NCBI GenBank assembly: GCA_965637545.1
Contig: OZ281500.1
Location: forward strand, 20,708,001-20,772,000
Length of the DNA: 64,000 nucleotides
Reading direction: 5' to 3'
DNA from: Phallusia mammillata
Lineage: Eukaryota
Part shown: piece after piece, positions 218 through 52,000 of the stretch
Layout: every line of letters begins with the position of its first letter
Position numbering within the stretch: the first letter of the stretch is position 1
Program-made: the position numbers and the translations under genes
Notes under the pieces: generated by a model
What the model was told of the DNA's origin: nothing
What the model saw: the letters and a program-made list of their open reading frames with translations, nothing else
The model's database searches: none

Positions 218-2564
218 AACGCCTGCACCGGTACCCATCTCCGGTGGAATTTTAACCCCTTAGGGGCCTGGGTGGGTGACGGCGACGAATTTCTAAACCT
301 AGGTTTAGAGGTAAAGTTATTTAGCCACGCGCCACGCCTAACTAGAACGATAACTTTTGGGGATAGTGGCACGCAAATCCCATGCTCCATTCTGTCTACT
401 CTACCCCTAGTTATCGGTGCTACAAGTATCTACACCATGGCGTAACCTAATTTGTAGCACCAAAAAAACAAAAACAACCGGACCTTCAATTCGCTGGACC
501 ATACAATGACGAATGAAGGCCGCAACGCAAGTTAACCTAAAGCTATTGCCTAGAAAAAAATGTCGCATTCATTGTTGACTATAACGCGACCGCGTCTCCT
601 ATAGTTAACATCACTTTGTTCTGAGGATATCCATGATTCGCATAATCTCGAAGTGTCGATGACTTTTGATTTGTTGGATCTGAAACGAAAAACAACTAGT
701 TGGTTATAGTTGCTGTTATTTTAGTTTAAAAATATCTACCCAGATTTTTTAATGTATGAACTGTTTCAAAATGATATTTCCTAACACGTGTTTAAAAACT
801 ATTAGTTTCCGAAGTGCAGAGTTCTGTTTTTCGCTCACCACAAACTCTGTAGGAAAAAATCAAAATGCTGTCATATCTCAATCTTACACACATTACCTTG
901 AGTTTTTTAGAGTTGCCGGATAAACGTGTTTTTTAGAGTTGTCGGATAAACATCAGCCACTTCCAGAGCTTCTATGCATTTGAACTGAAAAAGGTAGTAA
1001 TATAATCCACAAGTTAACGATAACGAAAAACTTAGCATAAAAAACACATATGCCACATCGATTCGTGTCAGCTTATAAGCAACTATAGTTGTCGAAAGAT
1101 TTGGAAATTAAAAGGTTATACGCAAACTATAGTTAAAAGTCCGAATTAACCTACAACATTCATGACAAAAGCGCCATTCATAATTTACATGAAGTCTAAC
1201 CTTTGATGCTTGCCATTGTTTTCGTAACAATGTAATCAACAACATACTTCATAAAATCGAATGTTTTGCTTTTGTAGACTGCAAAACAAAGCTTTGTTAA
1301 ATAAACAGACTTCGCATAACTGGTATGCTTGTAAACCAGTTGTTTTCAATTTCTCCAAAAAAGCACAACGAATACATTTAACAAAGTTAAGTTTATTGGT
1401 GGGATATCTTATTTGGCAATTTACGGTCAAGCACCAGTTTACAGGAAAAATACTCAAGTTATATAAATTAGCTGCAACTAAATTGACCGACACACGGTGT
1501 GGCATGTAAAAAATGTAAAAAGCAACACACAGTATCCAAGTTTCATTTACTAATTTAACCATATCTTTAAACAGCATTGGGTTTAAGTTACTTACCAATT
1601 TCTGAATGTTATGCAACTTCAACCAATAGTCCTGGGATAATTCGGAGTTTTACTTTAGCAACAATTTTAACAACCACCACTTACTTAAACAAATCGAAGT
1701 GCGCTTTAGCAATTAACCCTGCCTCGCCTTGCTTCGGCCGTGTGTGACGTCATAAAAATCGCATTTTGGAACGCCAATCGACCAATCAGAGCGAAGAGCG
1801 TAATAAACGAAATGCGCTGAAACGCGGTTATGTGCGTCATTTTTGTTGAATAGGTCGTACCTTAGCTAGTTTCAAACATCTGAGCTTCAGTTTAGGTCCA
1901 ATTAGGTTCTCTGATGTAACTGATTGCACGCCTAATGTGCGTTTACTGTAAGTTTGCGTATGGAATGAATGCATCAACCACTTTTGTCCTGACTACAGTG
2001 ATCGTATAAGAACGCGCCCCGTAGCTGAAAAGTCACGTGACCAATGGCGCAGGTGTGTTATAGAGGCTAAATCAGAAATATTCCTAACATAACTATCCTC
2101 CTTTCAAGAATACTCCCTTATATTTATGTATGAAATGAAACGTACATTGACATTATTTTATGGGGCTGCTGTCTGATTGTGTATCTATTGTGGTTCAAGA
2201 AACAAATTTGTTAATCGCATAGTTTGTGTGTATAAACAGGCCCTTCGTCAGAGTGAAACAATTGTTGTTAATTAGCCTGCTGGAATTTATAATTGGCTTG
2301 ATAGAACTGATTTTAGGTGGTTAATAGGCTATATCTTTGCTACTTATTTCCATTTTGTTGGTTTAATTCTATGCTTTTCATTTCAGGTGGACCTTCATTA
2401 ATCAATTTCTAACCAGAAAATGACCCTATAAAAAGAAACTTGTGCTATTTTTTATGCAAGTTGGGACGTTGAAATTTGCTCTTCCGGCCGTTGTGACTTC
2501 TTCGTGTTAGCCCAAATTGGGCCGTGTCGGTCTGCGTATGTCTTCAACTGTCTGGTGACTGACA

Positions 2565-7320: not shown

Positions 7321-14919
<7,599 letters not shown>

Positions 14920-22420: not shown

Positions 22421-22749
22421 TAGAGTTGTAATAGTCGGGTTGGGGCCGGGTTCGGGCTTATGTTTCATAAAAAACGGGCCTGTGTCAGTATTTTTTTTGA
22501 ATGAATTGCTGGACCTAACCTAATGTCAAACAGCCCCAAAAACGCCTTGTTGAAGGCTAATTGTATATTGTGTTTGTTGTCTTGGTCTTTCCTGGGGCTT
22601 TAATGTCTAGGCCTATCAATCAAACTTGCAGCTAAAACAGGCTTCACAAAAACGACTGGGTTCGGGTCGGGTTTCGGGCTTGTACTTTCGGGTTCGGGCC
22701 GCATTCGGGCCGGGTTCGGGATCCAATTTCAGACCCGTTAAAAACTCTG
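22421..22749. mobile_element. hAT-type MITE, family C (TTCGGGC-rich)
   Basis: Ends TAGAGTTGTA / AAAACTCTG; flanks AGTTGGCC / AGTTGGCT; internal GGGTTCGGG repeats shared with 33267-33481 and 38867-39234. Confidence 0.8.
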
Positions 22750-23057: not shown

Positions 23058-26292
<3,235 letters not shown>

Positions 26293-31001: not shown

Positions 31002-34000
31002 TCAGGAGTGCGACAAACGCGATCGAGCTGACTTTACAAAGTCCAGCAACGGCGTCGACTTAGAACGAGTCAATTTGCAACGGGCAGCCGAGGAACGGAC
31101 GAAGGCACGCCGCGGCGTTGAAGTTGGAAGCGACGAGCTACGGTGGACAGCTGCGCTGCTTTTGTTGGTCTCAATTTCGCGTATAAGTTCGCGCACAGGC
31201 CGCGGAGAATCTGTTTGCTCTGGGTCTGTAAGCTCAGGCTGTGAAGTTGTAGCCGAGAGACGCCTGTGCGGGCCCCATATAGAGCGGTACGTCGACCTGA
31301 ATATCGAACCTCCGCTACGCTCAGACTGTGTACGCCTTACACGACCTGAGCGTGAACTTGTGGAGCTTGGCGGTGAACCCGACACATCCCGACAAGTCCT
31401 GGGAGCCCGATAAGGAGTTGCGCTTACTAAAGCAGCTAAGTCCTTTGATCCAGTCCTGGGCGATGACGTCACTGGAGTTATTACGTCATGAGGGGTCTTT
31501 TTAGATGACGTTGCAGGGGAACTAAACTTCCCCACGAGATCACGCACCCTAACGTCATGATCATCTGTGACGTCACAACCACTGTCGAATACGTCACCGT
31601 CGCCTCGCTCCTTGGACGGAGACAAACTTCCCATAAGCAGTTTGTTGATTACCGTGGTTGGCGTGGATTGACGTTTTTCGAAGTTCGAGTTGTTAATAGA
31701 AGAATCGGTATTTGGGGAATCACTGGCTTGGTGGGATTTACTGTCACTTTTACGGCCTGTCAATTTTCTCACGCGTTTCTCGATCTCTCGTGCCATCTGC
31801 CGAACAAGACCGCGCCGTTTTGCTGGCTGCGTTGGTGTGCGTGAAGGCTCGTATGACGCTATTGGCTCCGGTTGATTCGGCGTCGAGAAGGATGAGGAAC
31901 GACTGCTTTCGTCTGAGTCACTCATAAGTTGCATTCCAACCTAAAATACCAAGAAAATCGTGAAAATCAAACACTTGTCCTATCACAGTGGTTCCCAACC
32001 AGGGGGTGGTGGAATTTTGTAATTTGTAGGCGGGAATTTTGTAATTTGTAGGGAGAATTTGTGTCACAATATTATTCTCTTACTGGTAGTCTGTGCTATT
32101 TGTTATTGCTGCATTTGCCATATATGAGCTGAAAAAGAAAGTTCTCGTATAATCGATTTAAGGCAGCAATGCAGAAAGTCTATAAGAGCCACTGGCCTAT
32201 CAAGTCCTCAGTTTTCAACACTTACCTCTCTTATAACTTGCAATATTTCGGGAGACAACGGGCCACTCCGCCTTATAGCCTCCTCGCCTTCTTCTGCTTT
32301 AGTCATATCCAGCTTGGGGGCAATTGGCTTGGCAGGACTGCTTGTCAAACTGAATGGTGGCGAAATTACAAAACTCTCTGGCGCCATCTCGCTAGCGGGC
32401 GAATTGTTATTATTATTGGAATTCGGATTCGGTTTAGGGGATGCCTGGCGGTCGCCGATGTAAAACTGGGAGTCGCCTTTTGCCGCGTTTTCCGCGTCAT
32501 CGGTTTCCATGGGAACCTCAGCCACTGGCACGAAAGCACATGACGAGCCGGACGGGGTTAAAGGTGAGGTCTGATGACGTCGCGATGACGGCATCGACAT
32601 GGTTCGCTGAATTCCTTCCCCTTCGGGCCGAACTCGAATTTCACCAGTTGAAGGGTCTTGGCGGCTTTCAATGGCAGTAACGATTTTTCGCACAGAAAAC
32701 GCTTGGGTTTCGGAAAATGACCGACTGCGCGGGCCCATAAGGCTTTCGTCTGTATTTGGAGGGTCTACAGCTTTGGGGACGTCAATATCCATACTGGTGG
32801 GTGGTAGAGATGCAGTCTTGTGGTGGCCTTTGACGAATACAGGCTTTTGGCTGTCCTCGTCTACTTGCATAATCGGTACTGTATCATCACAAGGCGATTC
32901 TATGACAGCTACAATCGCGCGGACCGGTACTGGCGCCTTCAAAGTCGGTGATTCGGGAGCAACGTCATCTGCGCTTTCAGGTTCGGCTGGCTTTTCCCCG
33001 GTAAAGCGAGACTTTAGTAAATCAAAGTCCACACCTTTGGCGTTTTTGTATGAGGGGCTGTTCATAGGAGAAACCATAGACGGGTGCTGCTCTTCTGCTA
33101 TGCTGACGTCGAGGTCTCCGGGTCGTTTCATTGGTTCGCACATTAGCGCCGCTGGTGACGAGCTACGCGTTTTTTTCTTTTCCTTCTTGGTCCTGATCTG
33201 ACGGCTTGGTGGTGGTTGTGTTTCACTAAAAATAGATTTGTGTTGAAGGTTGCTTAAAATCGACATCAGAGTAAGTCGGGACGGGCTTTTCGTGCCGGGT
33301 TCGTGCCGGGTTCGGACTGGGGTTTCTTAAAGAAAACGGGCTCGATTCGGGCCTGACTTTACACTTTGTCAGCATTTTTTAAATAAATTTAGCCAGCTAA
33401 GTAGCCAGTTACTGGCCCTAAACGGGCTTCCCAAAAACGATTCTGGTTCGGGCTCCAGTTTCAGGCGAGTTTACAACTCTGAGCGACATAGGAAACAGTA
33501 AAGATATATTTCACCATGGATGGATACAGGTAAAAAAGAACGCACTAGAAATAGCAATGTAAGGCATTCAGATTCTCACGGAGGAATGTTTAAAAATATA
33601 ATAGTGTTTGCCAAGTGGCCGTCAAGCGAGCAGTCGGTTTCTTGACTTACTTCCCGAACAAGATATTTTACGATTGCAAACAACCAAAGTCAATAAGAGC
33701 ATTTCCGTCCAAACCATTAAACGAAATACATCGTATGTATTTCTGTGACTAGGCAGCTTTTTTCATTAAATTTAGCCACAAAAAATCCAAATGGTCGGTT
33801 GCAAAAAGAAACTCTAATAAACAAACGTAGAAAATGTTACCAAATTAATGAAATTTCCTGGTAAGTAAAGCAAAGGACTGAGACGATTCAGGGTCATTAT
33901 TTCATGACTGCAGGATATTTCAAAATTAAACCACTAAATCAGTCGCTGTATTTTTGTTGTTTCACTGTATTTGAAGTCACGTCAGGCGAAGGAGTTTTTG

Positions 34001-37000
34001 TAGTTCGTTAGTGCGTGGGTGTACTTTTTCTATTACTGGTTTTATCACGTTACTACTTGTTTTTCAGACACTGATGATGCTTGTGAAAGCGAAATACATT
34101 TGTTTTGTAAAACAATAAAAATACAGCAACTGATTTAGTGGTTTTACTTAAAAATTCCTAATAAACAAAGCGCTTAAATTTAAACATTTCAATGCCATGT
34201 ATAGTTGATCACTGCTACAATACAAGGCACTGACATGAATATACTACGAAAAAGTTAAACAACACTAAAGTGAATCCAAAATGCATTCACATAATCTAAA
34301 ATGGCTACACATTTAACCAGCATTAAACTTACCCGACATGTACAAAAACGCTGTCCTCGCTTACTGCCAAGTCGTCAGGGTCTTGGGGTTTTCGTCTCAT
34401 TTGTCTCCGTTTTGATGTAAAGGATTTTCTTTTTTCTTCTGCCATCTGCATTCTGTCCAAGTCGGTCCCACTGGGAAGTAGAAGCTCTCCAGGCTCGGAA
34501 GATGGAAGGCCAATGCCTGTAATGGAAATGTAATCTAAGTTATGCTGATCGGATTTTACCATAAATCCAGTTTAAACGGGCGTTTCGTTAAATATGGACT
34601 AGGGTGGAATAGAAAAAAAATCACTGAATATCAATATATGCAGTAAACCTCGGTGAAAATGGATTAGGTGAATCCTGATCTAAATCCTGAAGGTACAAAT
34701 GATTTGTAATGTATTAAAGGCTTTAACTAATTGACATCAGTTAATCCGGATCTTTGCCTAATCCGGACATTTTTTGGTCCCAACAGGCCTGGATTAACCG
34801 AGGTTTACTGGGTAATAAATGTTTGTAAGGCTCGGACTTTAACAAGGCAAGAAACTTAACAAACGTAATATATTTTAGTTAGTAGTTAAACCAACTGATC
34901 CCCAAGGTAGACAATTTAGAGTAGTAATTGTCCTTAACAGAGTATCGAGCCACTATAACAACACAAGTCGGTAGGGCCAATGTCTTGTCAACATCTGCAC
35001 TGATGAGACCTCATAGGTCGAATCTGTGTGCACTGTCTGCAGTTTAATTAATATTAACACTTGATACAATCAATCAAAAATAACAAAAACGTTAGACTGT
35101 TAGCAGTAATATATACATCACTTGAAACGTATAATAACATCAAAAAACAGTTACGGATTAGGTCTGGTTCATTGATGATACGCCTCAAAGGCCAACAGTG
35201 TGCACCGCAGTCAATACACAAGCATTGATTTGTATTGTTAATCCGTCTTACCGTTTCTGAATGAATCGGTAGGCGTGTCCATAGGTAAATGACCGTGTTC
35301 AAACGAGTTTTGGTTGGCATTGTAAGGGCGTCGACCTTCGTCGGGCGACCAAGACTTGGGCCTAGATACCTGAAAAGTAATAGTCAAGTTTTAAATTGTA
35401 GATATTTAATTATTTTTAGGAACTGTGCACATAACGTAACAGACAGGTAATGGATATAATTATATACACACGCATTCTGGTAGCTATGTCTTTGTTTAAT
35501 AAACCTGCTTTAAACTGATGACACAACATCGCAATTTAGTGGAACATTATAGATGAATAGCGATAGGTAAACAATATTAGTTAATCAAGCTGTCCCGCAG
35601 AGGAAATCAATAAATTTACACCGACTCCTTAAAACGCAGCACAGACAAATATGCTGCGCGAAAAAAACGCACACCAGAGTTTACTAACATTAACTGACAA
35701 AAATAGTTACACATAATACATTTAGAGTGGTTATTACGGGGGTAATAACATTATCATGTTTTATCTTCGTGACGTCATAGTTGGCAATCTCAATTTTTTG
35801 ATAAAACGGTAAAAACATCGTCTAGTTGTTCCCAGGGATAACGGTAACATAAAAAGTTAATAGCTACTGCTGCTACTGTATTACATAACTCATACACGAG
35901 ATACCACGTCACAAGCGTGACCATAACGCACCTTAGGTGTCGCTAAAGAGGCGATATCGAGCAGTCGTCGGTTGAGGTCGAAATCGTGGCTGTCCTCTAA
36001 CAAGTTGTCTTGGTTCTCATCCGTTATTTGGATGATCGGTGCGCCGCATCTTGGCGAGACAACAGCAACTGGATGGTCATCTGCGATGCTCGGCTCCGAT
36101 AGACTGGACTCCGAACGAGAGCGAAACAATTTGTTGTGTCTTTGGGAGCTAGAGCGAAAGATATTAAATTTAGGCAATGTTGGAATAAATTACACACACC
36201 TCTCTGTAGTATAAACACTGTGCTTATACAAAAAAATAGTCCTGAAGAAATGCGCGCCCATTACAGACGATTCGGACTGATTTAAGTGTACTGAAAACTT
36301 CGGTTTGGTATGTTATATTATATGGTTTACGCGTTTTAGGAACGCAACGAAAATGTGTTTTAAAGATTCGAGTACAATTTAGGTTTGTTTCGCGTAGGAA
36401 TTAGACATAAATATATAAATTGGTATATTTAATGAAGCAACTTTAAATACTACGAGAACACACCAAAATTATCAACTTCGTAACGCCCTTGGCTTTCAGT
36501 TCTGAAATAGGGTTCAATCCGATATTTACAGCAGCTTTTACTGTTTTTCTATATTTGTCACTGGTGTGTAAAAAAAGTGTAGGGGTCAATTCGCCCACAG
36601 CCAAGCAACCATGTTTGGATGAAACTGCCACTAATTTTGCATGCTTGGTTGAATTGAGCGGTCCACTTATCACTGCAAGTCTAGCGTTCCTTATAAGACG
36701 AAACAGTGTGCATCAACGGCAGAATATTATTTATACTGTATCAAACAAATTGACTGAAAATACACCAACCTAGCCGCCAAAATCCCTTCATATTCGTCCA
36801 GCTGTTTCAAGAACGACGGGTTTGGGTTAACAATTGACCTGCACTTCTGTACAAACTGCAGGGCGGCGGTTTTTGTCCATTGCTTTTCCTTCATCAAGTA
36901 AGCAGCAACGGTGGCTCCAGAACGGCTTATTCCCATCTTACAATGCACTAGGCATTTTCCACCAGCCCTTCTGGCCTCGTTCACGAATTTCCATGTAATA

Positions 37001-40000
37001 TTCCAGTGTGGTAGAAGGTCAGATTCTTCTATGTCGTATAGGCGGATATTTTTGTAAGTGAAGTCGTCTGGGAAGAAGTTATCCACTTCGAGTGTAACAT
37101 TGAGAATGTGCGTGATGCTGGAAAAAGTTACATTTTTGAGCTAACCAAAATTACGTGTTTTAACTGGTCCGCTAAACAGCTAAAGTCCTCATAAGGTATA
37201 CCATACACGCTGAAGTCCTTGTACAGGCATACCATACATTTTTTCAAGGACTGTCCTCGTTTTTAACAAAAACCAAGTTGTCCCCCGTTGACAGTAAAAA
37301 AATGCCCAAAGCCCTACATTATAATTTCCAGTTTTTACTTAATATGTATATATGTCACAAGTGTGCCTTAAAAACAAATTCGATTGAAGTTAACAATTTA
37401 GAAGTTGGCTAAACTTCATCCCAACTACGTTATGTTGATTAACTGCTTTGTCGAATATCTGGGGCTTTTATTTTCTTTGGGTCCCAAAAGTAGCTTAAAA
37501 TCTGCTTTATGTATCCTTTAAGTCGTGATAAAAATATGGTAGGCTTCTAAACCACCAATTTCGCAAACAAAAGAGTTTTGCAAGGTGCGACCTACGAGAG
37601 TTTGTTTGGTAAACAAACTGAGAAATAAAAGATCTTACAAAGATTGTTTTAATTTAAAAAAAATACTATTTACGGATTTGTTCACGACTTAGTTTCTTTC
37701 GTGAAAATAACGGCTCAAATAGACGTAAAAAGCGACATGCTTTATATTTCAAACGTTTAGGCAAATGCTCATGCCATCATCAGTGATATTGATATCACTA
37801 TTTTGGCCGTTATTTTCACCATTAAACAAAAATCGAAAGAAACGAAGTCGTTTAACCCTAAAAAGCGTTGGCTTCATGACAAAGAATATTCACAACTTTT
37901 ACCCGAGCTCCTCTAATTCATCAAAGTTTGAAGCGTTCCACTCTGATCCGAGATAAAGATAGTCAAGAATCTTAGATGAACAATCCATTTGTCCGAGAAT
38001 AGTCAGCATCTCAGTATCAATATATTCCTTGTAATTACTCAGGTCCATGTCAATCTACGACGAAAAAGATTTATCACATATGGGCTAGAAGTAGTAGACA
38101 TTTATCATGTTATAATATTGAAGTTTGCATAAAACAACCCATTTTGTGCCGCAATTTTACCAACTTGGGGCCTCATTCGTGCTTTTTTGTAGACATTTCG
38201 GGCTTGTACTTTCGGGTTCGAGACGTGTTTGGGCCCCACTTTCAAGCCCGATTGCAAAACTTAAGCCTGTGTGTAGCTATTGTCGTGCACTTATTGCAAG
38301 GTAAACTTACAACGCCGTTGTGCACTAATCTTCGCACGAAACGGTTGTAAGCCGACTGTAATTTTTTGAGCTCACTTTCAGACCTGAGAATTTGAGATAG
38401 TACAATTTAACTTATAAATGGCACAAGATGGGTCGTAAAATAAAAATCGCTATTGTAAAAGCATATTTTTTCACTTCTCAAAAGCTAGATATTTCAAGCC
38501 TATGCCTTTCTCTGTAGGAATGCTTGTTAGACCAGGTTGATTCCATAAAACGCCTTCAATTGGCCTGGCGTACTATGACACTATAGAAAAATGACCAAAC
38601 ACAAAACTTTCAGCACCCATATGTACACAACCCAGCAAAACATACAAGCTTCAAGACTTACCGCTTTTTCGAGCGCCCTTCGTATTTCCCTGCATGTGCA
38701 GTTATCCAAATCCATCGTCATCATAACCTGCTTTAACTTGCTGCGGATCAATGTCTCCACTGGGGCGCGCTCCGGGTCCCTGTAATCACAAGCAGTGTGA
38801 AAATAATCTTACAGCATACTCATTATATGATAAGATATAAGCAACAAAGTGGGAAGTAGTGTGGCTCAGAGTTGCAAGCGGGCCCGAAATCTGAGCCCGA
38901 ACCCGGCCCGAACCCGAAAGTATAAGCCCGAAGCCCGGCCCGAACCCGAAACGTTCTTGAGAAGCCCGTTTAGGCCCGAAATGTTGATTGACAGGCCTAC
39001 ACACAAAAGCCTTGCAACAAAGTATGAGAAAGAAAATAAGACAAAAGACAACAAACACAATGAACGATAGTAGACAATGGGGCAAACAATACGTTTTAGA
39101 GTAGGGTGGGCGTTAGGTCCAAGCCAAAGAATTGTTACTAAAAACTGGCGGAAACGGAACGAGAAGTCAGGCCCGTTTCGAGCCCGTTTTCTGACAAATT
39201 CCTAAGCCCGAACCCGGCCCGACTTGCAACTCTGGTGTGGCTGCAATTGCTTATACGCTCAATGTCTTATTACTATAGCTGCACTGATGAGACCTTTTAG
39301 GTCAAAACAGTGTGTACTGTGCAGCTTGTATTTATCACGTAAAACAAGTGTTTGACAGTTTTGACAAAAAAACTATTTTTTGAGAGCATATAAACGCGCT
39401 GGTTTGCTTATGCACTATTTCAATGATAATGTTGTCGACGAAACTTTCCTCTGTGGTTGAGTAATTAAAATGTCTAGGTTTCATGTGACACTAGTGGCAA
39501 TTTGGTTTTTAGCTATTTCGTAGAACATCGAATAATTGAAGACCTTGTTTCGGTGGTTCAAACTCAGAGCAGTAAATCATGCCTTAGTATAAACAAAACG
39601 AGCTTGATTAGCACACAAAGCCACATTTGTCAATTTCACCTTGGTTAGTCCAACATTGGGGCCTAATTCGGGTAATATTTTTTGTAATTCGGGTTCGGGG
39701 TAGCTTACATCTCTGTTTCTACTACATAAATATGCACAAAAAGGATGGAAATCGAAATTCTTTGTCCTATAGTCCTGGTGAATTTACAAAAATAGAGCTA
39801 TTAATAACAACAAGATCGAGTGCCCTAATGTATCTACTATCTACACCACACTCGTTAACCGGGCGTTGAACTTGCGCGAGTGGCAGCTTAATGTCAACAG
39901 ATAAGATGAGCGGGTTGTTAATTGTCCGGATGTCACACGGCATTTCACGCTTATAATGTTTGCGAAAAAATGTCAACCCTATCTGCCTCTAAAACGCGTT

Positions 40001-43000
40001 CGCCTAAAGCCAAATATGGATTGCTAGCTGATACACATAAATTTCAACTAGAATGAGTTACAGGGAAACACACAATGGTTTATAACTTGGGTCACTAAAG
40101 AACTCAGACCTCAACGGCAGTGAAAAATATTTAATAAATCGTATGGAACATATTGTCAAACACGGTGTATTTATAGTATTTTTAATATTGAATATTCACG
40201 CTTACAGGCAATTTCTCACAGGTATGTGCTTGATTAGTTAGGAATCCACCTATATAAGTTCAAATATGGTTGTTTTCGTCTTTTTCGAAACTTATGTACG
40301 GATTTGTATAGGTTACGTGGCCCACGCTGCATAAAAGTTAGTTTGGTAACTTTTAATTTATATGGACTAAAGCGGCAAAAGACCAACAATTACCTTACAC
40401 GCAAAGGTGAAAAACCACAGTCAACCAATTAAACATTTGTCGTAATGTTTCACCACAGCATCAAGTTTCACTTTTAGCGACAGCTTCCTATTCTATGTAC
40501 CTTGCTTGCAAATGAGTCCCTTTCATTACGAATACTGTGTACAATGGTAGGGAAAAATCACAGACAGTAAATGCGACGGGACGAATAAAAATGAGACTAG
40601 TCAAGTGGCTTTCAACCACAACATTGAAAAGGTAGCAGTTTTTGCGTCTTATTTTCAAACCGCAAGCCGCTTAGTGTGTATTTTGGACATGGAAAAGTTG
40701 CGCAATATAAAAAGAATTTTTGCGTCAGGTATGTCCTAATTATAAAGGAGAATTGCGTCTCAAAAGTTTTTAAGAAATCTTACTCAAATAGAATCTTTAA
40801 AAAGCAATTGTCGGCTTAAAATGCCTACTATCAGAGGATTGATCTAGTGGAAATCATTATTATTTTGGGTTATAGCACACATATACTTAATGATGAAAAT
40901 AACGGCACAAATAGACTTAAAAACGACATGCATTACTGTTCAAACGTTTCGTTAAATGCTCATGCTATTATCAGTGATATGAAGGGCCACATCAGTTACA
41001 CCCGTTCATATCCACTTGAGTCACGTAAAAGTTGTTTCTTAATAACTTTTACCAAATATTTTATATAGTTTCTTAAATTATTTGTAGGTCACAAAAGTTA
41101 CGACTCACTTTTCAGCAAAATAGTTAGGTCTGGCCGCCCATAGGTCTTCATTATATTCCCATTCGTTGATGTAAAGTCTTTCAGATGTTATACGACTGTG
41201 GTAAAATCCTGTCCATGTAAGATAGAGGCTACCTTCGAAATAGTTGTGTCTTTGGGCGACGTCCACTGCTCGGTGCAAAGTCTGAAGCGCCGACCTGCAG
41301 TAAGGAATAATTCTATTTATTTTGTTAAAATGAACAAAATTAGTAATTAGGATCAGCTCTGAAACGTTCACGCAGACCAGCGATCACGGCACATTCACAG
41401 TACGCCAGGTCTATTGAAGGCGTTCGACCGAAGCACTGTATATAATGCTGTATAATGCTGGCGCACTTTGATCTATCTGTTTAGGTTAATATGTGCTTTG
41501 GAAAGGCCTTATTTATGCGGACGTACTTCGATAAGTATAACAAACAAGATACGGTCATTATATTCTAAAACTGACGCAGTTGATATTTTATGCCAGACAT
41601 TGTTTTCTAAAGATCGTAACGTTTAAAGGCCTTGGGTCCAATGGGTATACACTACCAAAACATATAAAAAGGCAAAACCAAAATAGGCTGGTTTAAATTA
41701 CGCGCCACTTTTTGGTTGGGGTTCAGTGCAATTGCGTTAATCGAGGTTACAAACTGGAACCGTATTGTTTTCACTTTAAACAGCAAGTGTATAGAAGTCT
41801 AGACTTGGCACCACAGCCTGCAGGACCACCTATCTATCAACAATGGCCTCTTGGCTTTTGCTATTGTTTGTCCGTATATGGTTAATGTGCTGCAAGAGGG
41901 AAGTAACGGAGAACTTAAAACGCAATTTAGAAACCTACACACCTACTGACTTTCCTTAAAGCGGCCGTACACCAAAACAGACATTCATCACATACGAGGT
42001 ATTATATGTTAAGACATGGAAATTATTGTGCAATCATGGGCGCAACTAGGGGGGCAGTTTCGTCGGCATGCCAGGTGCCTTTTCTATCGGCGTTATTGCG
42101 CATAACGGCTCTCGTACAGCGCCGAAAACACAGGTTCGTTCGCATCAAAGCTAAAAATAACTTTCAAATGACAGGACAAGGCGCCGGTACAGCAGTAAAT
42201 CGCTTCATCGTGTATTGCGATGGTAAAAACGGAGTTTCTGCGATGTATTTATACAACAACCTGTAGCGGCCTCTCTCACTACCGTTATCGTGTGCTTTCA
42301 TACTACAGCAAACCGGACAGATTGCCTTCTTTCTCTGACACTCGTCTTATGCGGCGTATTCGCTCATTGTGTTATTCTATTACGATGTACCTCGAATAAA
42401 CACCTCGCTACAAACCTAAATAACCGCAACAACGATCTTTGTTCGAACTTGAAAACGTATTTACAAGTAAACACAGAAAAATAAAATGTTTATCGGCGTG
42501 GAACTTCAGCCAAAAATCTTTCAGCAACTTGTTTGTAATTTACGTCCACGTCTCTATGTAAAGCCATCATTGCAATTCCGCTAAGTCTTTTAGCACCACA
42601 ACTATTTCGAAGGTAAGTCTTTAACCTTTTAAGGTCTGAAAAGGTTCTCTCCACTGAAGCAGTAGTGCAAGGTACTGTGAGGAAAATTTGTGAAAAGCAA
42701 TGAATATTCGGGTAGGCTTCTTCCTTAGCATGGGGTAGAGTTTCATCAATCGATGTAGGCAAAGAAAAGAAGTTGGTGTTTTTCCATTTTAAAGCCCATC
42801 GGAAAATCTCTTGCGCTACAACGTCTGCTGAATGCAACAAATCTCTCTCGTACATGTCTATAATATCGCTAAAGTGACTCTTCGCGTCTCCTGGGCAAGT
42901 GATGTTAGATTTGTTAATATTAACAGGAATAAGATCTGATATTTTGGCCACTTTTTGAAAATGTAAATTGAATCTCCTGGATAATTCAGAAATGACAGAT

Positions 43001-46000
43001 CCTATAAAAGGCTGGAATACATTTTCATAATAAAAACTCTCGACTTCTTCATCAGTGGGATTTGAACGGAGGTTTCTACACGATCGCAATATAAAATTTT
43101 CGTCAGCGATTTTACAAGCTTGTTTGTAAACGTCAAGGAACGTTTTTCTTGCATCTGTCAAAACATGTTCAAACATTCGTTTGATATCATGGACCATTTC
43201 ACAAACAGAGAGAAGATCGTTGGTTGTCTTTTGTAGTTTTTGTGAAAGCATTAGCATAGCTTCTGACACAAATTTAATAATCACTGCAGATACAATGAAG
43301 TCAAAAGATTTTACCCTGTAGCTTAATAGTGCGGCTTTATCAGAGGTGTTAGTGTCACGGTCGTCCTCCAACAAGTGCAAACACTGTAAAATTGCAGGAA
43401 AAAGCTCTACAAAACGAACCACAGCGTCATGTCTTTCAACCCATCTGACCGTGCAAAGAGCAACTAGAGTGGTCTTGTTGTAATTGGGAAAAATTATACT
43501 ATCACAATGGACTTTGTGACTTACAAGTGTTACTTTTTCACGGCATTCGAAGCAGTACAATCCAAGGGCGAATCCCAGTTTTTTTAGATTATTAGTGAAA
43601 AAGCGCGTCGGACCATTCGACCAATCTATGATACGCACTTAGCAATACAATCGTTTTTGGGAAAGTCGTATTGGTAGTTTGTTGCCTGCCCCCTCAATTT
43701 TCCGCTAGTTGCGCCACTGTGTGCAATGTTACAGTTTGAAAAGAGTTATGTGCATAAACAAAGGCTGGCATATGCCACGTCGCAAATTTATGCACATTAG
43801 ACAATAGACGAGATTTGAATACGACAGAACGTATATGTTAAGATATTGACATAAACACCATTGAATGTCTGGCCACCTTTCCTTAAGGCTAGATATTCAC
43901 AACTTGCATGTTTTGCATTGTATATTATAGCAGAAAATTTTAAGGCTTGATACTCAAAAACTACTTGCGTGTCTTGTAATGCATATTATAGCAGACCGGT
44001 ACAATGTAGTGTAGCATTCGTGATACATTGTTGACAGTCTCAACAAGATTTACCCAATAACCGAGCGTTCAACTTTCTAGATCTGCAGATTATATGCCCG
44101 CCAAACACACGTTATTACGTAAAGTCGGCACCGTCAATCTACATTCTAAGCCAAGCATTTCCCTGTTGAACGCTAGGCTTAACGAATATGCTTATTAGGG
44201 ATGCCATTCATACAGCCTGAACGCAAAAGTATAGCTTATAAAAGGACCACTAAAGCTAGCTATTAAGTTTGTAATGATGGTATATTGTAATCTACATTAT
44301 AATTTTGATTTATTCAATAGAAATTGGCCCCATATATAATCATACACTGCCCATGTTGGCTATTAAAGTTATGTAATGACGGTATATAGCATATTGTAAT
44401 CTGCATTATAATTTTGATTTATTGATCAAAAATTTGCCTCACATATCATCATACTGGCTGTGCTGTTATTATAGTCTTGATGAGTTACCTCTATAACCCT
44501 AGATGATTAAATAAATTTCGACATGGGCCGAGAAGCATGGTGTAAAGAATATTTGGAAGTCATTTCCTCAACACATAATGTATACAGTAATGCGATATAG
44601 CTAATGATTACACAGCCGTATTTTCGCACGGGAAAAGGTGTGTCTGATATGATCGCTGTACTTACCACATGGCTTGCACCGAGACGGGTTTAAAGATATG
44701 CTTGCGTTCGTGACAAATCACCTTGAATCCTCTGTAACAAAACAGAACGGGTGTTTAGATTGAAGCTTAGGGATTTTGAGGTCTGGCATTTAACAGTTCA
44801 TTTTCTTGGAAGCTTAGTCCTGCTTCTAGGTATAGTAGGGGCTAAAATCGTTAATCAGCTGTCTGGACATGTGTTGACTGGTTTGTGACGTAAACATATA
44901 GGGGCTGTTGCATTTTGAAACTTTGTGTTGTGATGACATATTCATTGGCAATAATAACTGTGCAAAATATCGTATTATAATATTTTTTTAATACCGCGTA
45001 CCAGTGGCAAAAGTTTGAAAAAGGGGCATTGTGTTTGAAATGGAAAACATAGTCCATTAACCCTCCTAAAAATATCGTAACTATTAGTTTAAAACGCTGA
45101 TTTGTGGTTCAAAAAGTGTGCATTTAAACTGTTATTTTAAGGGAAAAACATAGACCCTTGTGTCTGCTAAAAAAGTTATCACTATAAACAAGTGGGTTTA
45201 AAACATTTAAACGCCATATCGCACCAAAACTGTGCGTTTTAATCTTTCAATTGGGGGAAGGGCATGGCCCCTTGGCCTTAGCTACAGCAATGTCGTGTAC
45301 TTTAATTGTAGCACTTTATACAATTCCGCCACAAAGCATATAGTGTTAAAAGTTTCAACGTTTTGCTCCTAAAAAGTATTTTACCTATCCTTCTAATTCG
45401 CTTTAAGCAACAAAACACACAAACGTAGTATGCTCATGTAGCGGTAAATATAAAACAAATTCTCAACTGACCCGTCGCCATCTAGTCGTATGCTTGTGTC
45501 GCACCATATGGGCAGTACAAGTCCAATCGTACATGTAGTGCTTTCACGTGTGGCAAAATCGCACCCCACAATGATGCTCTCGTCCGTGTCTTGCCGTCCT
45601 GGATTACTTATGATAACCAGGTAACGTCTGTGGTTCTCTTTCCAACTCTCCAAGCGCACAGCCTTAAAACATATGTAAAGTTTATAGCTAGTGTTAAAGC
45701 ATAGTTTCATTGAGCAAAAACGGTATGTGTGACAAAAAAAAAACAGTCGAGTTCGGAAGGACCAAAGAAAAATAGAAATATGAATAAGCATACCAACTTG
45801 AAAAGAGCAAAAAAACTAAAAACGTAGACTATATGCAATTAAACAGTCGGCGATATCTGCAAAAAACGGTGTTCACTTCAAAGCAAAACGAAATATAGAC
45901 CAGTTTACCAACTTTAAACAGAACAAAAACTTAGAAAATTATAGTTTTATGCAACACAAACAGTTTACTTTGGTGATTTGACAAAGACTAAGACTAGAGT

Positions 46001-49000
46001 TCAGGAAATACAAAATAGGGTCAGCTCACCAACTTAATGTTATCATGGGGCCGGAGATGATGAAAAATAGCTCGCAGATGAATTTGAAGTTCACCTGCAA
46101 GAAAAAGAATTTCGGAATAAATTTCAAAACATGATATGTTCCAATCAACAACCAGGCAATTTAAGTCGGTCGCATAGCTTATTGAACATGTACTGATTTA
46201 TGATGCTATATGCCGTTCATAGTGGTAAAAAGCACTTTAGACTACAAAGATGTAAATATTTAAGTTTGCAGCATGTACTAAGCAACGAACCAACTTTGGT
46301 CAATTTTTAAAGTAATTTTTAAAAAATATTTTGAAAAATCACAGCTTTGGACATAATGTTTTAAATTAAACTACATAAACTTAAGTTATTGGGTAGGTAT
46401 AACCGTGAAATAGTAACGCCTAAAAACACATCGTTCAGTTAAAAAATATCCTTGTCAGTGATCGAGCACCAATATATGCGACAGGAATCGAAAGGTATAC
46501 ACCGCTTTTAATCCCTGGTCAAGCATGCGTCCTAAATCCTATAACACCAAAGATAATCCAGAGCATCCGATAAACAAACATGTCCAGTCTTGTCCTGGAT
46601 TACTTGCGCGAAGGCAAAAATTGGGCAAAGGTATCCCAAAAATGCTCGGCCTTTTGCCTCGGGTCAGCCAGCAGGTCACGGTCTATCGATGGCCTAACCG
46701 CGACGTGTTTATGGCATTACGCCGCCGACGCCAGTTTTTACAGCTCAGAGGGACCTAAATTTTTAAAAATGCCTGGTTAAACGGCCTACAGGAAACTGAG
46801 AACCAAATGCCTGGGATTTTTGACCAGTTCGGTGATGGAAATTTACAGCTATTTAGTTGACACGGTCTAGTTCTCAAAAGCAATTTGGGCTTTTTGTGCC
46901 ACAATTTCCTATTGTATCCCACATCAAATAGTTTTTGGAGTTCAGGATTGTTCGAAAACAAAAACAAAAGCGCTTTACTCCATGGTTTCCAAAATACGGG
47001 TTTGTTTAGAAACCCAAACAATATGCAACAAAGCATTTGAACCATAAACAACCTTTAAGCCATTTAACTATCAAGCAAAATACACCCAAAGACGTCATAT
47101 TTTGCTGGTAAATATTTGCATACGAGTCCACTCTCCACGCAGGGTCACAAAACGTCTAAAAGCGTTATGCCGCTGTTTACCAAGTGCAGTCAATCTTATG
47201 TTTGCTATAGTCTCATCTACGAGTCTTTATACGCAGATCGGGCTAGCTTATGTCAAATAGAGACGGGCGTCGTCTTTAAGCATCACAAAAGCTATGACCA
47301 GTTTGTGGAATTCTATGGAAGTGGAAAAAATCAACCGAGCAACCGCTAAGAAAGATGAAGGGTTGGTAAATACACTGCTGACGCACGCACCACGCTAAAC
47401 AGCTTAGAAGTAAACTTGTATATATCAATGTGGTTACATAACAATGGCTCCATATATCAAGTTTAAAACACATAAACTGCTGTAGAAGTGCGAAATTTCT
47501 TGTATAGGAAGCAAAAATACTTGTATAGGTCTTTTTGTATAGGAATGTTTTAACCAAACAGTCACAAATCTAACTTTTTACAGTTTAAAAGACAAAGTAA
47601 ACTGGGTTGTCAACAAAAAGTTGCAGATAAACAAACGAATTTGAAAAATGGCTCACATCGCATAGACATCACAATGCCCTTTGTTCTCAAGAACTAATTT
47701 ATTGTTTATTGTTACTTCACAGGTTATTGTTATCTAAAACCAGGCGAAAGTAGCCTTATTTTGTGTGCTATCAATCTTTCAAAGTTGTTTACACACAACA
47801 AAGCAGTTTTTGATAGTTGATTAGCAAGCCTTCCTGTGGCGAAGCTTAAGAAACCAACGTCGCAAAGACCACAATAACACTGTAGTAACGACGCAAAGGA
47901 CAACAAAACACACCCCTTGCCAGTAAACATCAAAAACGTTGTCAGGAAATGCACGTTTGTCGGACAAACTGCCAGTCAAATAGTAACGTAAATCAACGTA
48001 CGGCCGCCAAGCACAACGTATTGTACCTCACATGTCATTATATGTGTGTCAATAGTTATTTCATGTCTTGTGTTGCTAGGTTAGCTTTTCCTATGTTTGA
48101 CAAAGCAACCATTGCTTATAAGCAGGGTTGCTATGGGCTAAACCCTAAAATAAGGACAGCATAAAAATTGAATTTCATGCGAAACAAAACAAACTTTTTT
48201 GAACAAATCTTTGCATTTACGAGCCATAACATATCACATGCCAGATTTTGACGTGAACCACCCCTGACCTTTCTTTTATGATGTCACAAATTCATGTCTT
48301 GATATACGCAAGACGCCAAAGGAAAAAGATGGAAGTTTTATAATTGTCAAAAATAAGACTATGAGGACTCAGTCAAAAACAAGGACATTTCTTAGAAATA
48401 AAGACAGTAATTTTTCCAAGACATTTTGCCCTTAAAAATAAGGAGGAAATCTTAGAAACAAGGATGGTATGGCAACCCATGCTTATAAGAATTGCAGGAG
48501 CGAGTGTAGCATAGATATATTACTGAAAACACGGTGCAGTAACCTCAGTCGGTAAGGTTCAAAATTAGAAAGACCGCAAAATTACATGAATTATTAACAA
48601 TTTCGGGTGCCGTTGCCACACACGTGATCAGACGGTCACGCACGAATGGGCACATTGCAAATCATTGCTAACCCTTATTTGGGCATACAGAACGTCTTTT
48701 GTTTACAGGTAGCGGCAACAACGAAGCCCTGATTGATAATAAACAACGACAGAAGTGGACAATGCACTGCGGCTTGAAGTATGTCAAGCAGCGGCTACCG
48801 AAGGCATTTCGATGGCATGATTAACCTATTAAGAATGAATCGGATTGCATGCGTGACTCACAATACAGCGAGGCTGCCAACGCATGCAAATAGGAATTTG
48901 AAGTGATAGGATCGGACAAAATTGAATGGACTTCGATTGCGGTTCAGTTATAGTATTGGTAAGGGTGGTCACTATGTTAATATGTTTTGATATGAGAAAA

Positions 49001-52000
49001 AGGGTAATGCATTGGACAATGCTAATAGAATGCAAATACAAATTGTAGATAGGCCAATATGTGATATGTGTTTACAAGAACATGCAAAGTAATAAATCTA
49101 TCGCTATAAACTCTTAACTCCGATACGATAGAAAACCAGCATAATATGATAGAAACAGTTGAACAAACAACACCCTACAGGCTACGTTAAAATTGAATAC
49201 ACAATACAATTAAAAAATCACCTTCATCAGAAAACGATATGCAAACGCCATTAAAAGGGGCGATAATTAACAAAGTGACCCGTGTGTATATGGAAGCGGC
49301 ACCCATCAACAAACGTTAAACCGTGCAAAAAGCTTGCACCGTTTATGGCGTGAAAGCAGTAAATCGGATTTACAGCAGTCAAGCTTCGCAAGGTCGCCGA
49401 AGTGGTTTAATAGCTTTACGAGCGCTTAGCAGTTCAGCTTGTAAATGCAGGTGTTCGATCGAACTGGAAGAAAGGGATTACCTTTGTGACGTCATAAACT
49501 CCACTGCTTACGTCACAAGCGTAAATGGACGTGAAACCTATGGTGGTTAATTATTGAAAAGCAGATTGCCCGTTGTTCAACTATTCGCTCAGCACGCTAT
49601 TAGCAGGTTTAGCCAATTTATTTTTACACCGTTTGGGCCAAATACCAATTCCAAAAGGTCATTCAAACGCACAAATGCCAACAATAAACAAAAAACTACC
49701 AGCAACTATTAAAAAAACTACTTTTTCAACTGAAAAAACTTACCCTATGGTCACGTAATGTACATTTCTACAACATACACCATTACAACATAAACAGATT
49801 GGCTCATTTTTGTTGCAGTGCTTTAAAATACCTTGAGGTAATTTGAACTGACTGTCGTGTTTCCGTAACATCGTGCGTTGGGCCAGATCGTGCCTGCTAG
49901 CACGCTGAGCCCATGATGATGCAGAAGACAGAGTGGAGACCGTGGTTCCTGTGGACAAGGCGTCCAAATGCCGAGATACAGTGACCGGCTGGCGGATATA
50001 TGAGCCTGATGATGGTACATTGGGCATGGTGGCAACCACACATGAACACATTTGTGCCTGCTGGGCTCAGTGCCCTAGTATCTCCAATGGGTTTCAGATA
50101 CAGCTAGCTTTTGACTGCACAGAGCGATATCACTTGCGCTGAACGTTTACCTATAGCCTTACATGCTTTTGTAACGGTGATACTGCGCCTGTGTGGAAAA
50201 AGTAAACGGTCAACACGGTGGTTTTGCGTGTGGGAAACTCAAAAGAGAAAAGCGCACGACAAAAAGCACTGGCCGGCCTCAGCTGTTCCGGAAATAGTTT
50301 CTTGCACAAATGGTTGGTAAATTCCAACGACTGCATCAGTTTCAATGAGCTTATTAAGCACAAACGCACGTCCGTGCCAATTATATCCAAATCACTGAGT
50401 AATTTATGCAACAGATTTCTTTCAGTAAACTCTTAATGGGTAAAGGCTTTTTCGTCAAACGGAAGTAGGATAGAGCCTTAATGGAAGAATCAATGATTAC
50501 GAAAGTTGATTACGTGTGCATGACTCATCTGCTGCGCAACAATAGAATTGATGCATCGAGCTTAGTGACGAAACAAAAACAACAAAATCTCAATGAATAC
50601 AATGTCACACATGTGCAAATTTCAGGGACACATCGCATCGACTGTTATAACACACTTATATGAACAGAAGCATGTTTTCTATTACAATCTTTACTCAAGG
50701 TCAACTCGTCACTAGCTGCAATGATGATACCTTATAGGTCGAAACAATGTACACTGCCTGCAGCTTACAAATCTTTCCTCATACTTTTGAGCTTATAACC
50801 CCATAAAAACAGGACAGGCATGTTTTCCATAACAATCTTTCCTTACGGCCAATGTCTTGATACCAGCTGCACTGATGAGACCTTATATACATAAGCTTAC
50901 AAATCTTTCCTTGTTTTCGAGTTTAATCCATAACATTTAAAAGCCTGTTTTCTTAATTGGTACGGAGCTACGCTGGCATTATAAACCATCTGATAAAGGG
51001 CCTAATCCAAACGCATGTGTACCTAACCAATCCTTGTGTGTTAGCCTTACATCTGTCAGCTCAGAACTGTCAAACCTTCCAGCGTGCGCGGTGGCCTATA
51101 CTGGCACGCACGGGCCTTCTCAGAAGAGTCTCACACACTGTAGCCTGCGCATATCGATTGGCCTCGCACACAAATCGGTCAGCGCGAATCTCTGCCAAAT
51201 AAGGAGTGCGCTATTCACTGTTAGATACGTTGGTTGCAGTAGCACGCAGGCGGACAATAAGCACGTTGCGCTAATTGAGAGGCTAACGTTAGAACGGCTT
51301 GCTATGAGCTACGTAACGCGCCATAAGAAGAAGCAGAACCTGTTGACGCGTTACGCAATAAAAACCATTTGCACGTACCACGCATTTGCAAGAGGCACAT
51401 GTGTTGTTAAAATCCACATTGAACCTGTCATCAGGGTTGTATTCTTGTCTGACAGAACAGTGGGACCAGCCGGTGCTTTTTTGCTCGGTCAGGCCATAAA
51501 AAGATTACGCCACACGTACGGTATTGTAAATAAAGAAACGATATTGGTTTTATTTTATCTTTTCCAAAAAACAGTGTTAGACAAAACGCAGTTGAAAGAA
51601 ATGACCCATTATAATATCATCATTCATGAAGCTTTCAGAATTTGTGAATCACACCTATCAACACGTGGCTAAAAAGTAACTGAACCCGTAAAGAGGTCAA
51701 ACGAAAACATGCGAGTTCTTTTAAGGTGAAAAACAACGCGTTTATAAGGTAAACGAGTCAGCATTGCGAATGGGCAACCTGTAAGCGCCTTTAAACCTAA
51801 CTTGGGCACAGTGAATTGCCAGATCACCGCACACCGCAAAACGGCTGGGGGCAACGAAGACGTGACGTGCTTCACAAATTTGCACGATTTTTGTCTAACA
51901 GTCACGTGTGGGAACCAATGACAACGGAACTTACAACTAAGTCATTACGAATGACCACTTCCGGCTTGAGGGGAAAAGGTTACTTCGTTGACTAACTGCA

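What the first reader, a model, noticed from the sequence alone, without database searches (positions are those of the whole stretch)
34995..50887. Dispersed repeat family whose consensus is a canonical type I hammerhead ribozyme
Seen: four related copies (34995-35042, 39277-39326, 50714-50765, 50865-50887) give the consensus AGCTGCA CTGATGA GACC-N5-GGTC GAAA CAGTG-tg-CACTG TC TGCAGCT, containing stems I-III, the CUGAUGA and GAAA core and a GUC cleavage site. Stem III has near-palindromic centres (GTGCAC, TGTACA). Each copy has a different core lesion and all lie antisense to the SSH pre-mRNA. Established: minimal type I hammerheads mark Penelope-like elements and metazoan retrozymes and can cleave as dimers. 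Inference: a self-cleaving retroelement family in this lineage, with sense-strand intronic insertions probably purged.
Basis: partly seen in the sequence, partly recalled or inferred. Interest (0 to 1): 0.85.

Follow-up and report, generated by a model that had tools for sequence, protein, structure and literature searches.

The report
Decayed hammerhead retrozyme copies in introns
The repeats are real: they are old, broken copies of a small non-coding jumping element carrying a self-cutting hammerhead ribozyme, which is abundant and still intact elsewhere in this sea-squirt genome, but it is a kind already described in other animals (retrozymes that depend on Penelope-like elements).

Summary
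Observation confirmed. Each has its own core lesion. I found two more decayed copies: 36689-36734 (+) and 13083-13166 (-).

The genome (240 Mb) holds 442 exact matches to an intact core, helix II, helix III and GUC pattern, against 0 in the reversed control.

The family is a ~280-nt non-coding monomer with one type I hammerhead. Its insertions show:
- variable 5' truncation;
- partial tandems 269-282 nt apart;
- head-to-head inverted pairs (18 of 18 are -,+);
- a ~30-nt tail at one end only;
- 10-17-bp target-site duplications.

This is the published insertion signature of Penelope-like elements (PLEs). Coding PLEs are present (over 100 RT matches, open frames up to 945 aa) but carry different minimal hammerheads (2,119 hits). 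The family therefore fits a non-LTR retrozyme.

Not shown: self-cleavage, circular RNA or transcription.

The antisense idea is only suggestive. Four insertions, or five if the 50.7-kb tandem lies in SSH, are all antisense to SSH or PAPSS.

Other agents in this scan already found this family on other DNA of the same genome. Verdict: new member of a known kind.

The parts
34961..35052 (+). Copy 1. A 5'-truncated solo insertion, 83% identical to monomer positions 204-280 plus the first 17 nt after the cleavage site. Its hammerhead lies at 34993-35044 and carries an A15.1-to-U lesion.
36689..36734 (+). It holds the 3' half of the hammerhead (helix II 3' strand, GAAA, helix III) plus the start of the next unit. 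It is truncated inside the ribozyme and abuts the SSH DSPc exon.
   Evidence: 78% identity over 46 nt, E 8e-6
39238..39335 (+). Copy 2. A 5'-truncated solo insertion, 81% identical by local alignment (77% by BLAST). Its hammerhead lies at 39277-39326, with G12 changed to A and the UC of the cleavage site deleted.
50658..50950 (+). Decayed tandem of about two units with a ~145-151-nt period; the units are 82% identical to each other. It holds copy 3 (50714-50765; C3 to A, G10.1 to U, U16.1 to C) and copy 4 (50865-50887; internal deletions). The 99-nt spacer has no other match in the genome.
13083..13166 (-). It is 74% identical to the monomer, with the 5' strand of stem I deleted and A9 and G12 mutated. 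It lies in a PAPS synthase intron, antisense to that + strand gene.
36727..37086 (-). Host gene context: SSH (Slingshot) exon encoding the dual-specificity phosphatase domain.
   Evidence: DSPc, E 1.7e-26
41105..41371 (-). Host gene context: SSH exon, PH-like domain (profile positions 89-149).
   Evidence: E 3.3e-14
45393..45791 (-). Host gene context: SSH exon, PH-like domain (profile positions 18-98).
   Evidence: E 1.1e-24
13200..13610 (+). Host gene context: open frame holding a PAPS synthase exon (start of the ATP-sulfurylase domain), just downstream of the fifth copy.
   Evidence: E 1.3e-15; PUA_2 exons at 10562-10843 and 11218-11469 (+)

Best explanation
The window copies are old, inactivated insertions of a ~280-nt non-coding retroelement with one canonical type I hammerhead per unit. 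It is a non-LTR retrozyme that is abundant and recently mobile in this ascidian genome.

Proposed life cycle:
1. Tandem or partial-tandem copies are transcribed.
2. Each hammerhead cuts after GUC, as a monomer or as a double hammerhead formed through the self-complementary helix III.
3. This releases a 280-nt RNA, which a host RNA ligase probably circularises.
4. The RT/GIY-YIG machinery of the genome's autonomous Penelope-like elements copies that RNA into staggered nicks.
5. The result is 5'-truncated copies, partial tandems, head-to-head inverted pairs, a one-sided ~30-nt tail and 10-17-bp target-site duplications.

Shown: the motif, the copy number, the insertion anatomy, and the presence of coding PLEs.

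Inferred: cleavage, circularisation, and which PLE supplies the enzymes.

Integrated copies always run 6-8 nt or ~37 nt past the cleavage site. The template was therefore not the cut linear monomer, but an uncut multimer or a re-ligated circle.
For: - Intact copies: 442 exact matches to the core, helix II, helix III and GUC pattern, against 0 in the reversed control. A looser core pattern gives 870 against 2, almost all from this one family.
- Fold: the minimum-energy fold of a natural intact copy is exactly the three-way hammerhead junction. Rfam Hammerhead_1 aligns every core position at E 0.005.
- Monomer: 280 nt from cleavage site to cleavage site, no ORF (longest open stretch 60 aa in a trimer), strongly structured with z = -3.8.
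- 5' ends vary from -8 to -412 relative to CUGAUGA. 3' ends fall into two fixed classes.
- Target-site duplications of 10-17 bp flank most insertions.
- Among the first 100 places, 18 of 18 inverted pairs are (-,+), p = 8e-6, and there are 4 direct pairs 269-282 nt apart.
- These features match the published PLE insertion anatomy, including the tail at one end only (PMC8557442).
- Autonomous PLEs are present: over 100 RT matches in two lineages, open frames up to 845-945 aa, RT followed by GIY-YIG, themselves arranged in tandems and (-,+) pairs.
- Copies with an intact hammerhead are 89.5-99.7% identical to a reference monomer (median 96%). The window copies are 74-86% identical and have no recognisable duplications, so they are older.
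- Published retrozymes have the same design (PMC7229834; bioRxiv 10.64898/2026.07.22.740005).
Against: - No cleavage, circular RNA or transcription was demonstrated.
- The read data were contigs only, so they show no molecule ends. The three runs that hold the family are only guessed to be RNA.
- With a repeat of thousands of copies, about 1% DNA carry-over could produce those contigs even though the unique flanks have zero depth.
- Rfam's gathering score is not reached (22.8 against 34 bits).
- Monomer GC is 50%, at the upper edge of what is described for animal retrozymes.
- Arrays are short in the loci I held: mostly 1-2 units, the longest about 3.6 units.
- No sequence link between this family and a specific PLE pLTR was found.
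Confidence: 0.85

Rival explanations
1. The copies are pseudo-LTR fragments of an autonomous Penelope-like element, not a separate non-autonomous family.
For: - PLE hammerheads sit in pLTRs, and PLE insertions are heavily 5'-truncated, leaving mostly 3' ends.
- One family copy lies about 1 kb downstream of a PLE RT/EN remnant at C1:4.27 Mb.
Against: - Direct tandems are 269-282 nt apart with no ORF between them.
- On contigs C1 and C2, only one of the listed PLE RT places lies near a family hammerhead. That case is a separate inverted-pair insertion.
- Where I could read the 3' flank of a PLE ORF, it carried a different, helix-III-less minimal hammerhead. The same type brackets a lineage-B RT at C1:1.886 Mb.
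Confidence: 0.06
2. A SINE-like, Pol III-driven hammerhead element mobilised by LINE machinery, like Schistosoma Sm-alpha.
For: Small size, dispersed copies, a hammerhead and target-site duplications.
Against: - There is no A-rich or microsatellite 3' tail. Copies end at fixed internal positions.
- Partial tandems, obligate (-,+) inverted pairs and a one-sided tail are PLE hallmarks, not LINE ones.
- Pol III promoter boxes were not tested.
Confidence: 0.05
3. A satellite-type repeat spread by DNA-level duplication. The window tandem may simply be a local 151-bp duplication that happened to include a solo hammerhead fragment.
For: - The 99-nt spacer of the window tandem is unique in the genome.
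- The two units are only 82% identical to each other.
Against: - For the family as a whole, dispersed copies with duplications and 5' truncation show insertion through RNA.
- For the window tandem alone, the first ~25 and last ~25-45 nt of the spacer still align with the 280-nt monomer, as expected of an internally deleted or diverged unit.
Confidence: 0.03
4. Host-domesticated intronic ribozymes that regulate SSH or PAPS synthase transcripts.
For: Conserved intronic hammerheads do exist in amniotes (cited in PMC7229834).
Against: Every window copy has lost an essential core nucleotide or the cleavage site itself. All lie antisense to the host gene, so they are not even part of the pre-mRNA.
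Confidence: 0.01

Closest known systems
Metazoan non-LTR retrozymes (Cervera & de la Pena, NAR 2020, PMC7229834; Li, Clavereau & Pollet, bioRxiv 2026, 10.64898/2026.07.22.740005)
   Same: A short non-coding unit of about 150-450 bp with one canonical type I hammerhead. Tandem organisation, no LTR, PBS or PPT, target-site duplications longer than 4 bp, and co-occurrence with Penelope-like elements.
   Different: - Host: an ascidian. No tunicate appears in those papers or in my other literature searches.
- Arrays here are short, mostly partial dimers and inverted pairs rather than long multimers.
- GC is 50%.
- Helix III is longer (5 bp plus a 4-nt loop) than in the newt and axolotl ribozymes.
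- Circular RNA was not shown here.
Minimal hammerheads in the pseudo-LTRs of Penelope-like elements (Cervera & de la Pena, MBE 2014, PMC4209133; Craig et al., MBE 2021, PMC8557442)
   Same: The insertion anatomy (5' truncation, partial tandem, adjacent inverted 5'-truncated copy, 30-40-bp tail at one end), and the idea that the ribozymes may act as dimers.
   Different: PLE minimal hammerheads have almost no helix III (GAAACGUC), an unpaired base before a long helix II, and lie downstream of an RT/GIY-YIG ORF. This genome has 2,119 of those. The family studied here has a full helix III and no ORF.
Newt satellite 2, Schistosoma Sm-alpha and cave-cricket pDo500 hammerhead repeats (from my own knowledge and as summarised in PMC7229834)
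   Same: Type I hammerheads embedded in short repeated genomic units that are transcribed and self-processed.
   Different: Those were first described as satellites or SINE-like elements. Here the dispersed copies with PLE-type ends show how they insert.

Membership tests
Hammerhead ribozyme, type I (Rfam RF00163) | Conserved core: CUGANGA, GAAA, the A15.1-U16.1 pair, the G10.1-C11.1 pair, and cleavage after a UH site | tested here: met
   Met in 442 genomic copies by exact pattern, against 0 in the control. Not met in any of the six window copies; each has lost at least one of these positions.
Hammerhead ribozyme, type I (Rfam RF00163) | Three-helix junction with helices II and III closed and helix I open | tested here: met
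   The minimum-energy fold of a natural intact copy (L041:2993-3046:-) is exactly this junction, with 7-bp helix I, 5-bp helix II and 5-bp helix III, at -17.9 kcal/mol.
Hammerhead ribozyme, type I (Rfam RF00163) | Score at or above Rfam's curated gathering threshold | tested here: not met
   22.8 bits, E 0.005, against a gathering score of 34 for an intact copy. There was no hit at gathering level in the window. The shortfall comes from the longer helix III insert, not from the core.
Hammerhead ribozyme, type I (Rfam RF00163) | Site-specific self-cleavage | not testable with these tools
   Only contigs were available, so no read ends could be seen. This needs in vitro transcription.
Metazoan non-LTR retrozyme | Short non-coding monomer (~150-450 bp) with one type I hammerhead and no LTR, PBS, PPT or ORF | tested here: met
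   280-nt unit. The longest open stretch in a trimer is 60 aa. PBS and PPT were not searched for explicitly.
Metazoan non-LTR retrozyme | Head-to-tail tandem organisation, from dimers to multimers | tested here: met
   Direct pairs 269-282 nt apart. Blocks reach 1,007 bp, about 3.6 units. Most insertions have fewer than 2 units.
Metazoan non-LTR retrozyme | Low GC content (below 45-50%) | tested here: inconclusive
   The monomer is 50% GC, against 39.5% for the window.
Metazoan non-LTR retrozyme | Target-site duplications longer than 4 bp | tested here: met
   10-17 bp at most insertions.
Metazoan non-LTR retrozyme | Expressed as linear and circular monomer RNA | tested here: inconclusive
   The family is present in contigs of three runs guessed to be RNA, with zero depth on the unique flanks. 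DNA carry-over from a multi-thousand-copy repeat cannot be excluded, and no circle junction can be read from contigs.
Autonomous Penelope-like element | Single ORF with an RT and a GIY-YIG endonuclease between pseudo-LTRs | tested here: not met
   There is no ORF between tandem hammerheads. RT/GIY-YIG ORFs exist elsewhere in the genome, with other hammerheads.
Autonomous Penelope-like element | Insertion signature: 5' truncation, partial tandem, inverted 5'-truncated copy at the 5' side, 30-40-bp tail at one end | tested here: met
   compared with the description in PMC8557442.

The most novel reading that the evidence does not exclude
Sense-oriented copies with a working hammerhead are selected against inside introns because they would cut the host pre-mRNA. 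If so, surviving intronic copies are antisense or decayed. This would make the family a natural genome-wide readout of in vivo ribozyme activity in a chordate with transparent, electroporatable embryos, where retrozyme circles and their PLE-driven mobilisation could be followed directly.
Probability: 0.2. Interest if true: 0.5.

Novelty: new member of a known kind. Interest (0 to 1): 0.3.

Why it matters
It adds tunicates, the sister group of vertebrates, to the animals that carry canonical type I hammerhead retrozymes alongside Penelope-like elements. The papers I could search covered cnidarians, molluscs, insects and vertebrates but no tunicate.

The family is young: median 96% identity, with intact target-site duplications. 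Its ends show that the reverse-transcribed template extends past the ribozyme cut. That fits the circular-RNA or multimer template model and could be tested in a tractable model ascidian.

For this window itself the copies are dead intronic debris with no likely effect on SSH or PAPS synthase.

Tried and rejected
- Rfam at gathering level on the whole window found nothing. Weak sub-threshold hammerhead hits appear only at E-value level.
- A strict intact-core pattern in the window gave 0 matches, confirming that no window copy is intact.
- Tandem Repeats Finder did not report the 151-nt tandem because its units are too diverged.
- The GIY-YIG ORF near one family copy (L049) looked at first like an autonomous partner. 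It is a separate PLE remnant inside a large 99.9-100% identical duplication.
- ORFs flanking the tandem in L039 are a Ty3/gypsy pol into which the element inserted, not its own genes.
I therefore identified lineage-B PLE hammerheads only from pattern-match coordinates.
- RNA evidence: the reads tool returned contigs only, so no cleavage ends or circle junctions could be read. The result is compatible with DNA carry-over.
- No target-site duplications could be recognised for the window copies.
- I did not locate the first SSH exon, so the status of the 50.7-kb tandem (intron or upstream) is open.
- A findings look-up for SSH returned nothing.
- A core-like match at 25667-25698 lacks the helix III / UH context and is within chance expectation.
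Full report
**1. The observation**

The four copies are at 34993-35044, 39277-39326, 50714-50765 and 50865-50887, all on the + strand. An 18-mer covering stem I, CUGAUGA and the start of helix II finds exactly these four with up to 3 mismatches, against 0.04 expected from shuffles. The 3' half finds two against 0 expected.

Each copy carries a different lesion:
- Copy 1 has GAAU in place of GAAA.
- Copy 2 has G12 changed to A and has lost the UC of the cleavage site.
- Copy 3 has C3 to A, G10.1 to U and U16.1 to C.
- Copy 4 has lost most of its 3' half through internal deletions.

None reaches any Rfam gathering score.

- 36689-36734 (+), which holds only the 3' half of the ribozyme.
- 13083-13166 (-).

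**2. The family in the genome**

The window is C7:20708001-20772000 of a 240-Mb assembly. Other agents' notes call it Phallusia mammillata; I did not test that.

- A pattern demanding the intact core, helix II, helix III and GUC has 442 exact matches (219 forward, 223 reverse), against 0 for the reversed control.
- A looser core pattern has 870 matches against 2, almost all from this family.
- A natural intact copy folds, as its minimum-energy structure, into the three-way junction with the core unpaired.
- Rfam Hammerhead_1 aligns all core positions at 22.8 bits, E 0.005, below the gathering score of 34.
- The 12-nt helix III strand is self-complementary. Two copies are predicted to form a double hammerhead at -51.2 kcal/mol, against -35.8 kcal/mol for two monomers.

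**3. Anatomy**

I studied about 55 insertions in 60 fetched loci.
- The unit is 280 nt from cleavage site to cleavage site. It has no ORF, is 50% GC, and is strongly structured with z = -3.8.
- Homology between copies starts at variable points, from -8 to -412 relative to CUGAUGA.
- Homology stops at one of two fixed points: 6-8 nt past the cleavage site, or about 37 nt past it.
- In inverted pairs only one side has the longer end.
- Most insertions are flanked by perfect direct repeats of 10-17 bp.
- Among the first 100 places, 18 neighbouring pairs are inverted, and all 18 are (-,+). That means 5' ends face each other and ribozymes face outward (p = 8e-6). Four pairs are direct, 269-282 nt apart.
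- One tandem sits inside the pol gene of a Ty3/gypsy element.

This is the insertion signature published for Penelope-like elements: strong 5' truncation, partial tandems, an adjacent inverted 5'-truncated copy, and a 30-40-bp tail at one end (PMC8557442).

Because copies always extend past the cut site, the template cannot have been the cut linear monomer. This is my inference, and it fits the circle or multimer model proposed in PMC4209133 and PMC7229834.

**4. The autonomous partners**

- The genome has over 100 matches to a PLE reverse transcriptase, in two lineages. One lineage is about 85-100% identical to the query and the other about 45%.
- Open frames reach 845-945 aa, and the elements are themselves arranged in 2.6-kb tandems and (-,+) pairs.
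- RT is followed by a GIY-YIG endonuclease.
- Their 3' flanks carry a different ribozyme: the helix-III-less minimal hammerhead ending in GAAACGUC, with an unpaired base before helix II.
- That type has 2,119 matches against 35 in the control, in several sub-families. It brackets a lineage-B RT at C1:1.886 Mb.
- On C1 and C2, only one of the listed RT places lies near a 280-nt-family hammerhead, and that one is a separate insertion.

So the family is a separate non-coding element with a canonical type I hammerhead, living beside PLEs with minimal hammerheads. This is the same split described for a coral (PMC7229834). It also matches the view that animal retrozymes are non-autonomous PLE derivatives (bioRxiv 10.64898/2026.07.22.740005).

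**5. The window copies in that light**

- Copies 1 and 2 are ~90-100-bp solo 3' ends, covering monomer positions ~199-280 plus 17 nt. They are 81-83% identical to a living monomer.
- The 13.1-kb copy is 74% identical, and the 36.7-kb fragment is truncated inside the ribozyme.
- No target-site duplications remain.
- Living copies are 89.5-99.7% identical to the reference (median 96%), so the window copies are much older.
- The 50.7-kb tandem has two units that are 82% identical to each other.
- Its 99-nt spacer matches nothing else in the genome, though the ends of the spacer still align with the 280-nt unit. It is either a relic of an extinct short variant or a local duplication; I cannot tell which.

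**6. Orientation**

- SSH lies on the - strand, with exons at 45393-45791, 41105-41371 and 36727-37086.
- PAPS synthase lies on the + strand, with exons at 10562-10843, 11218-11469 and 13200-13610.
- The copies at 35.0, 36.7 and 39.3 kb (+) are antisense to SSH, though the 35.0-kb copy lies downstream of the last exon I identified.
- The copy at 13.1 kb (-) is antisense to PAPS synthase.
- The 50.7-kb tandem (+) would also be antisense if it lies in SSH, but I did not locate the first SSH exon.

Four of four (or five of five) gives a one-sided p of 0.06 (0.03). That is suggestive, not significant. An antisense excess of transposons in introns is common in general (my own knowledge).

About a third of intact hammerheads sit in inverted pairs, which always place one ribozyme on the sense strand. 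Unchecked notes from other agents mention such copies in introns.

**7. Expression**

- Runs that hold the family include 14 small contig sets guessed to be RNA.
- In three of them, contigs cover the element while the unique flanks have zero depth.
- In a DNA run the element's summed depth is about 2,500-7,000 times the unique depth.
- With that copy number, roughly 1% DNA carry-over would give the same picture.
- Contigs show no molecule ends. Transcription, cleavage and circles therefore remain unshown.

**8. Literature and novelty**

Retrozymes and PLE hammerheads are well described. No tunicate appears in those papers. The only tunicate mention I found is a count of 9 type I hammerhead loci in the Didemnum genome paper.

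Other agents in this scan had already met this family on other DNA of the same genome and reached the same class.

Verdict: a real, correctly recognised repeat; a new member of a known kind; ordinary at this locus.

All analyses used natural copies.

Noticed in passing
G000 genome-wide; e.g. L034:1977-2008 (+), L031 near 1283-1311 (-): PLE-type minimal hammerheads (CUGANGA ... GAAACGUC) occur 2,119 times against 35 in the control, in several sub-families. Variants of helix II look compensatory, for example GUCC/GGAC against GCCC/GGGC. They lie about 140 nt downstream of GIY-YIG ORFs.
   Followed up: partly
window 42490-43638 (-): A 382-aa open frame with a hAT C-terminal dimerisation domain (E 2.7e-8). 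It is a hAT transposase remnant inside an SSH intron.
   Followed up: no
L041:3428-3598: A different, very abundant ~170-bp repeat next to the retrozyme insertion. Its summed depth is in the millions in the DNA run, and it is far more enriched than the retrozyme in the three probable-RNA runs.
   Followed up: no
L049, L051, L052 (G000 C1 near 4.27, 4.43, 4.45 Mb); also L050 near 4.03 Mb: Stretches of 4-6 kb that are 99.9-100% identical, some inverted. They are recent segmental duplications or assembly duplicates, and each carries the same retrozyme copy and PLE remnant.
   Followed up: no
L039:1-4069: A Ty3/gypsy element (protease, RNase H, integrase C-terminal domains) interrupted by a retrozyme partial tandem between RNase H and integrase.
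   Followed up: partly
window 38883-38951, 22672-22711, 38196-38235: A GC-rich short repeat built on CCCGAA/GGGCTT-like units: a 32-nt tandem of 2.2 copies, plus dispersed 40-nt relatives.
   Followed up: no
L044:2992-4202: An inverted-pair insertion with intact hammerheads on both strands ends 27 nt before a 261-aa open frame with TPR repeats on the + strand. This is a possible case of an intact sense-strand ribozyme next to or inside a gene.
   Followed up: no
window 31002-31934 (-) and 32208-33266 (-): Two long open frames (310 and 352 aa) without Pfam hits, downstream of the SSH phosphatase exon. They may encode the poorly conserved C-terminal tail of SSH.
   Followed up: no
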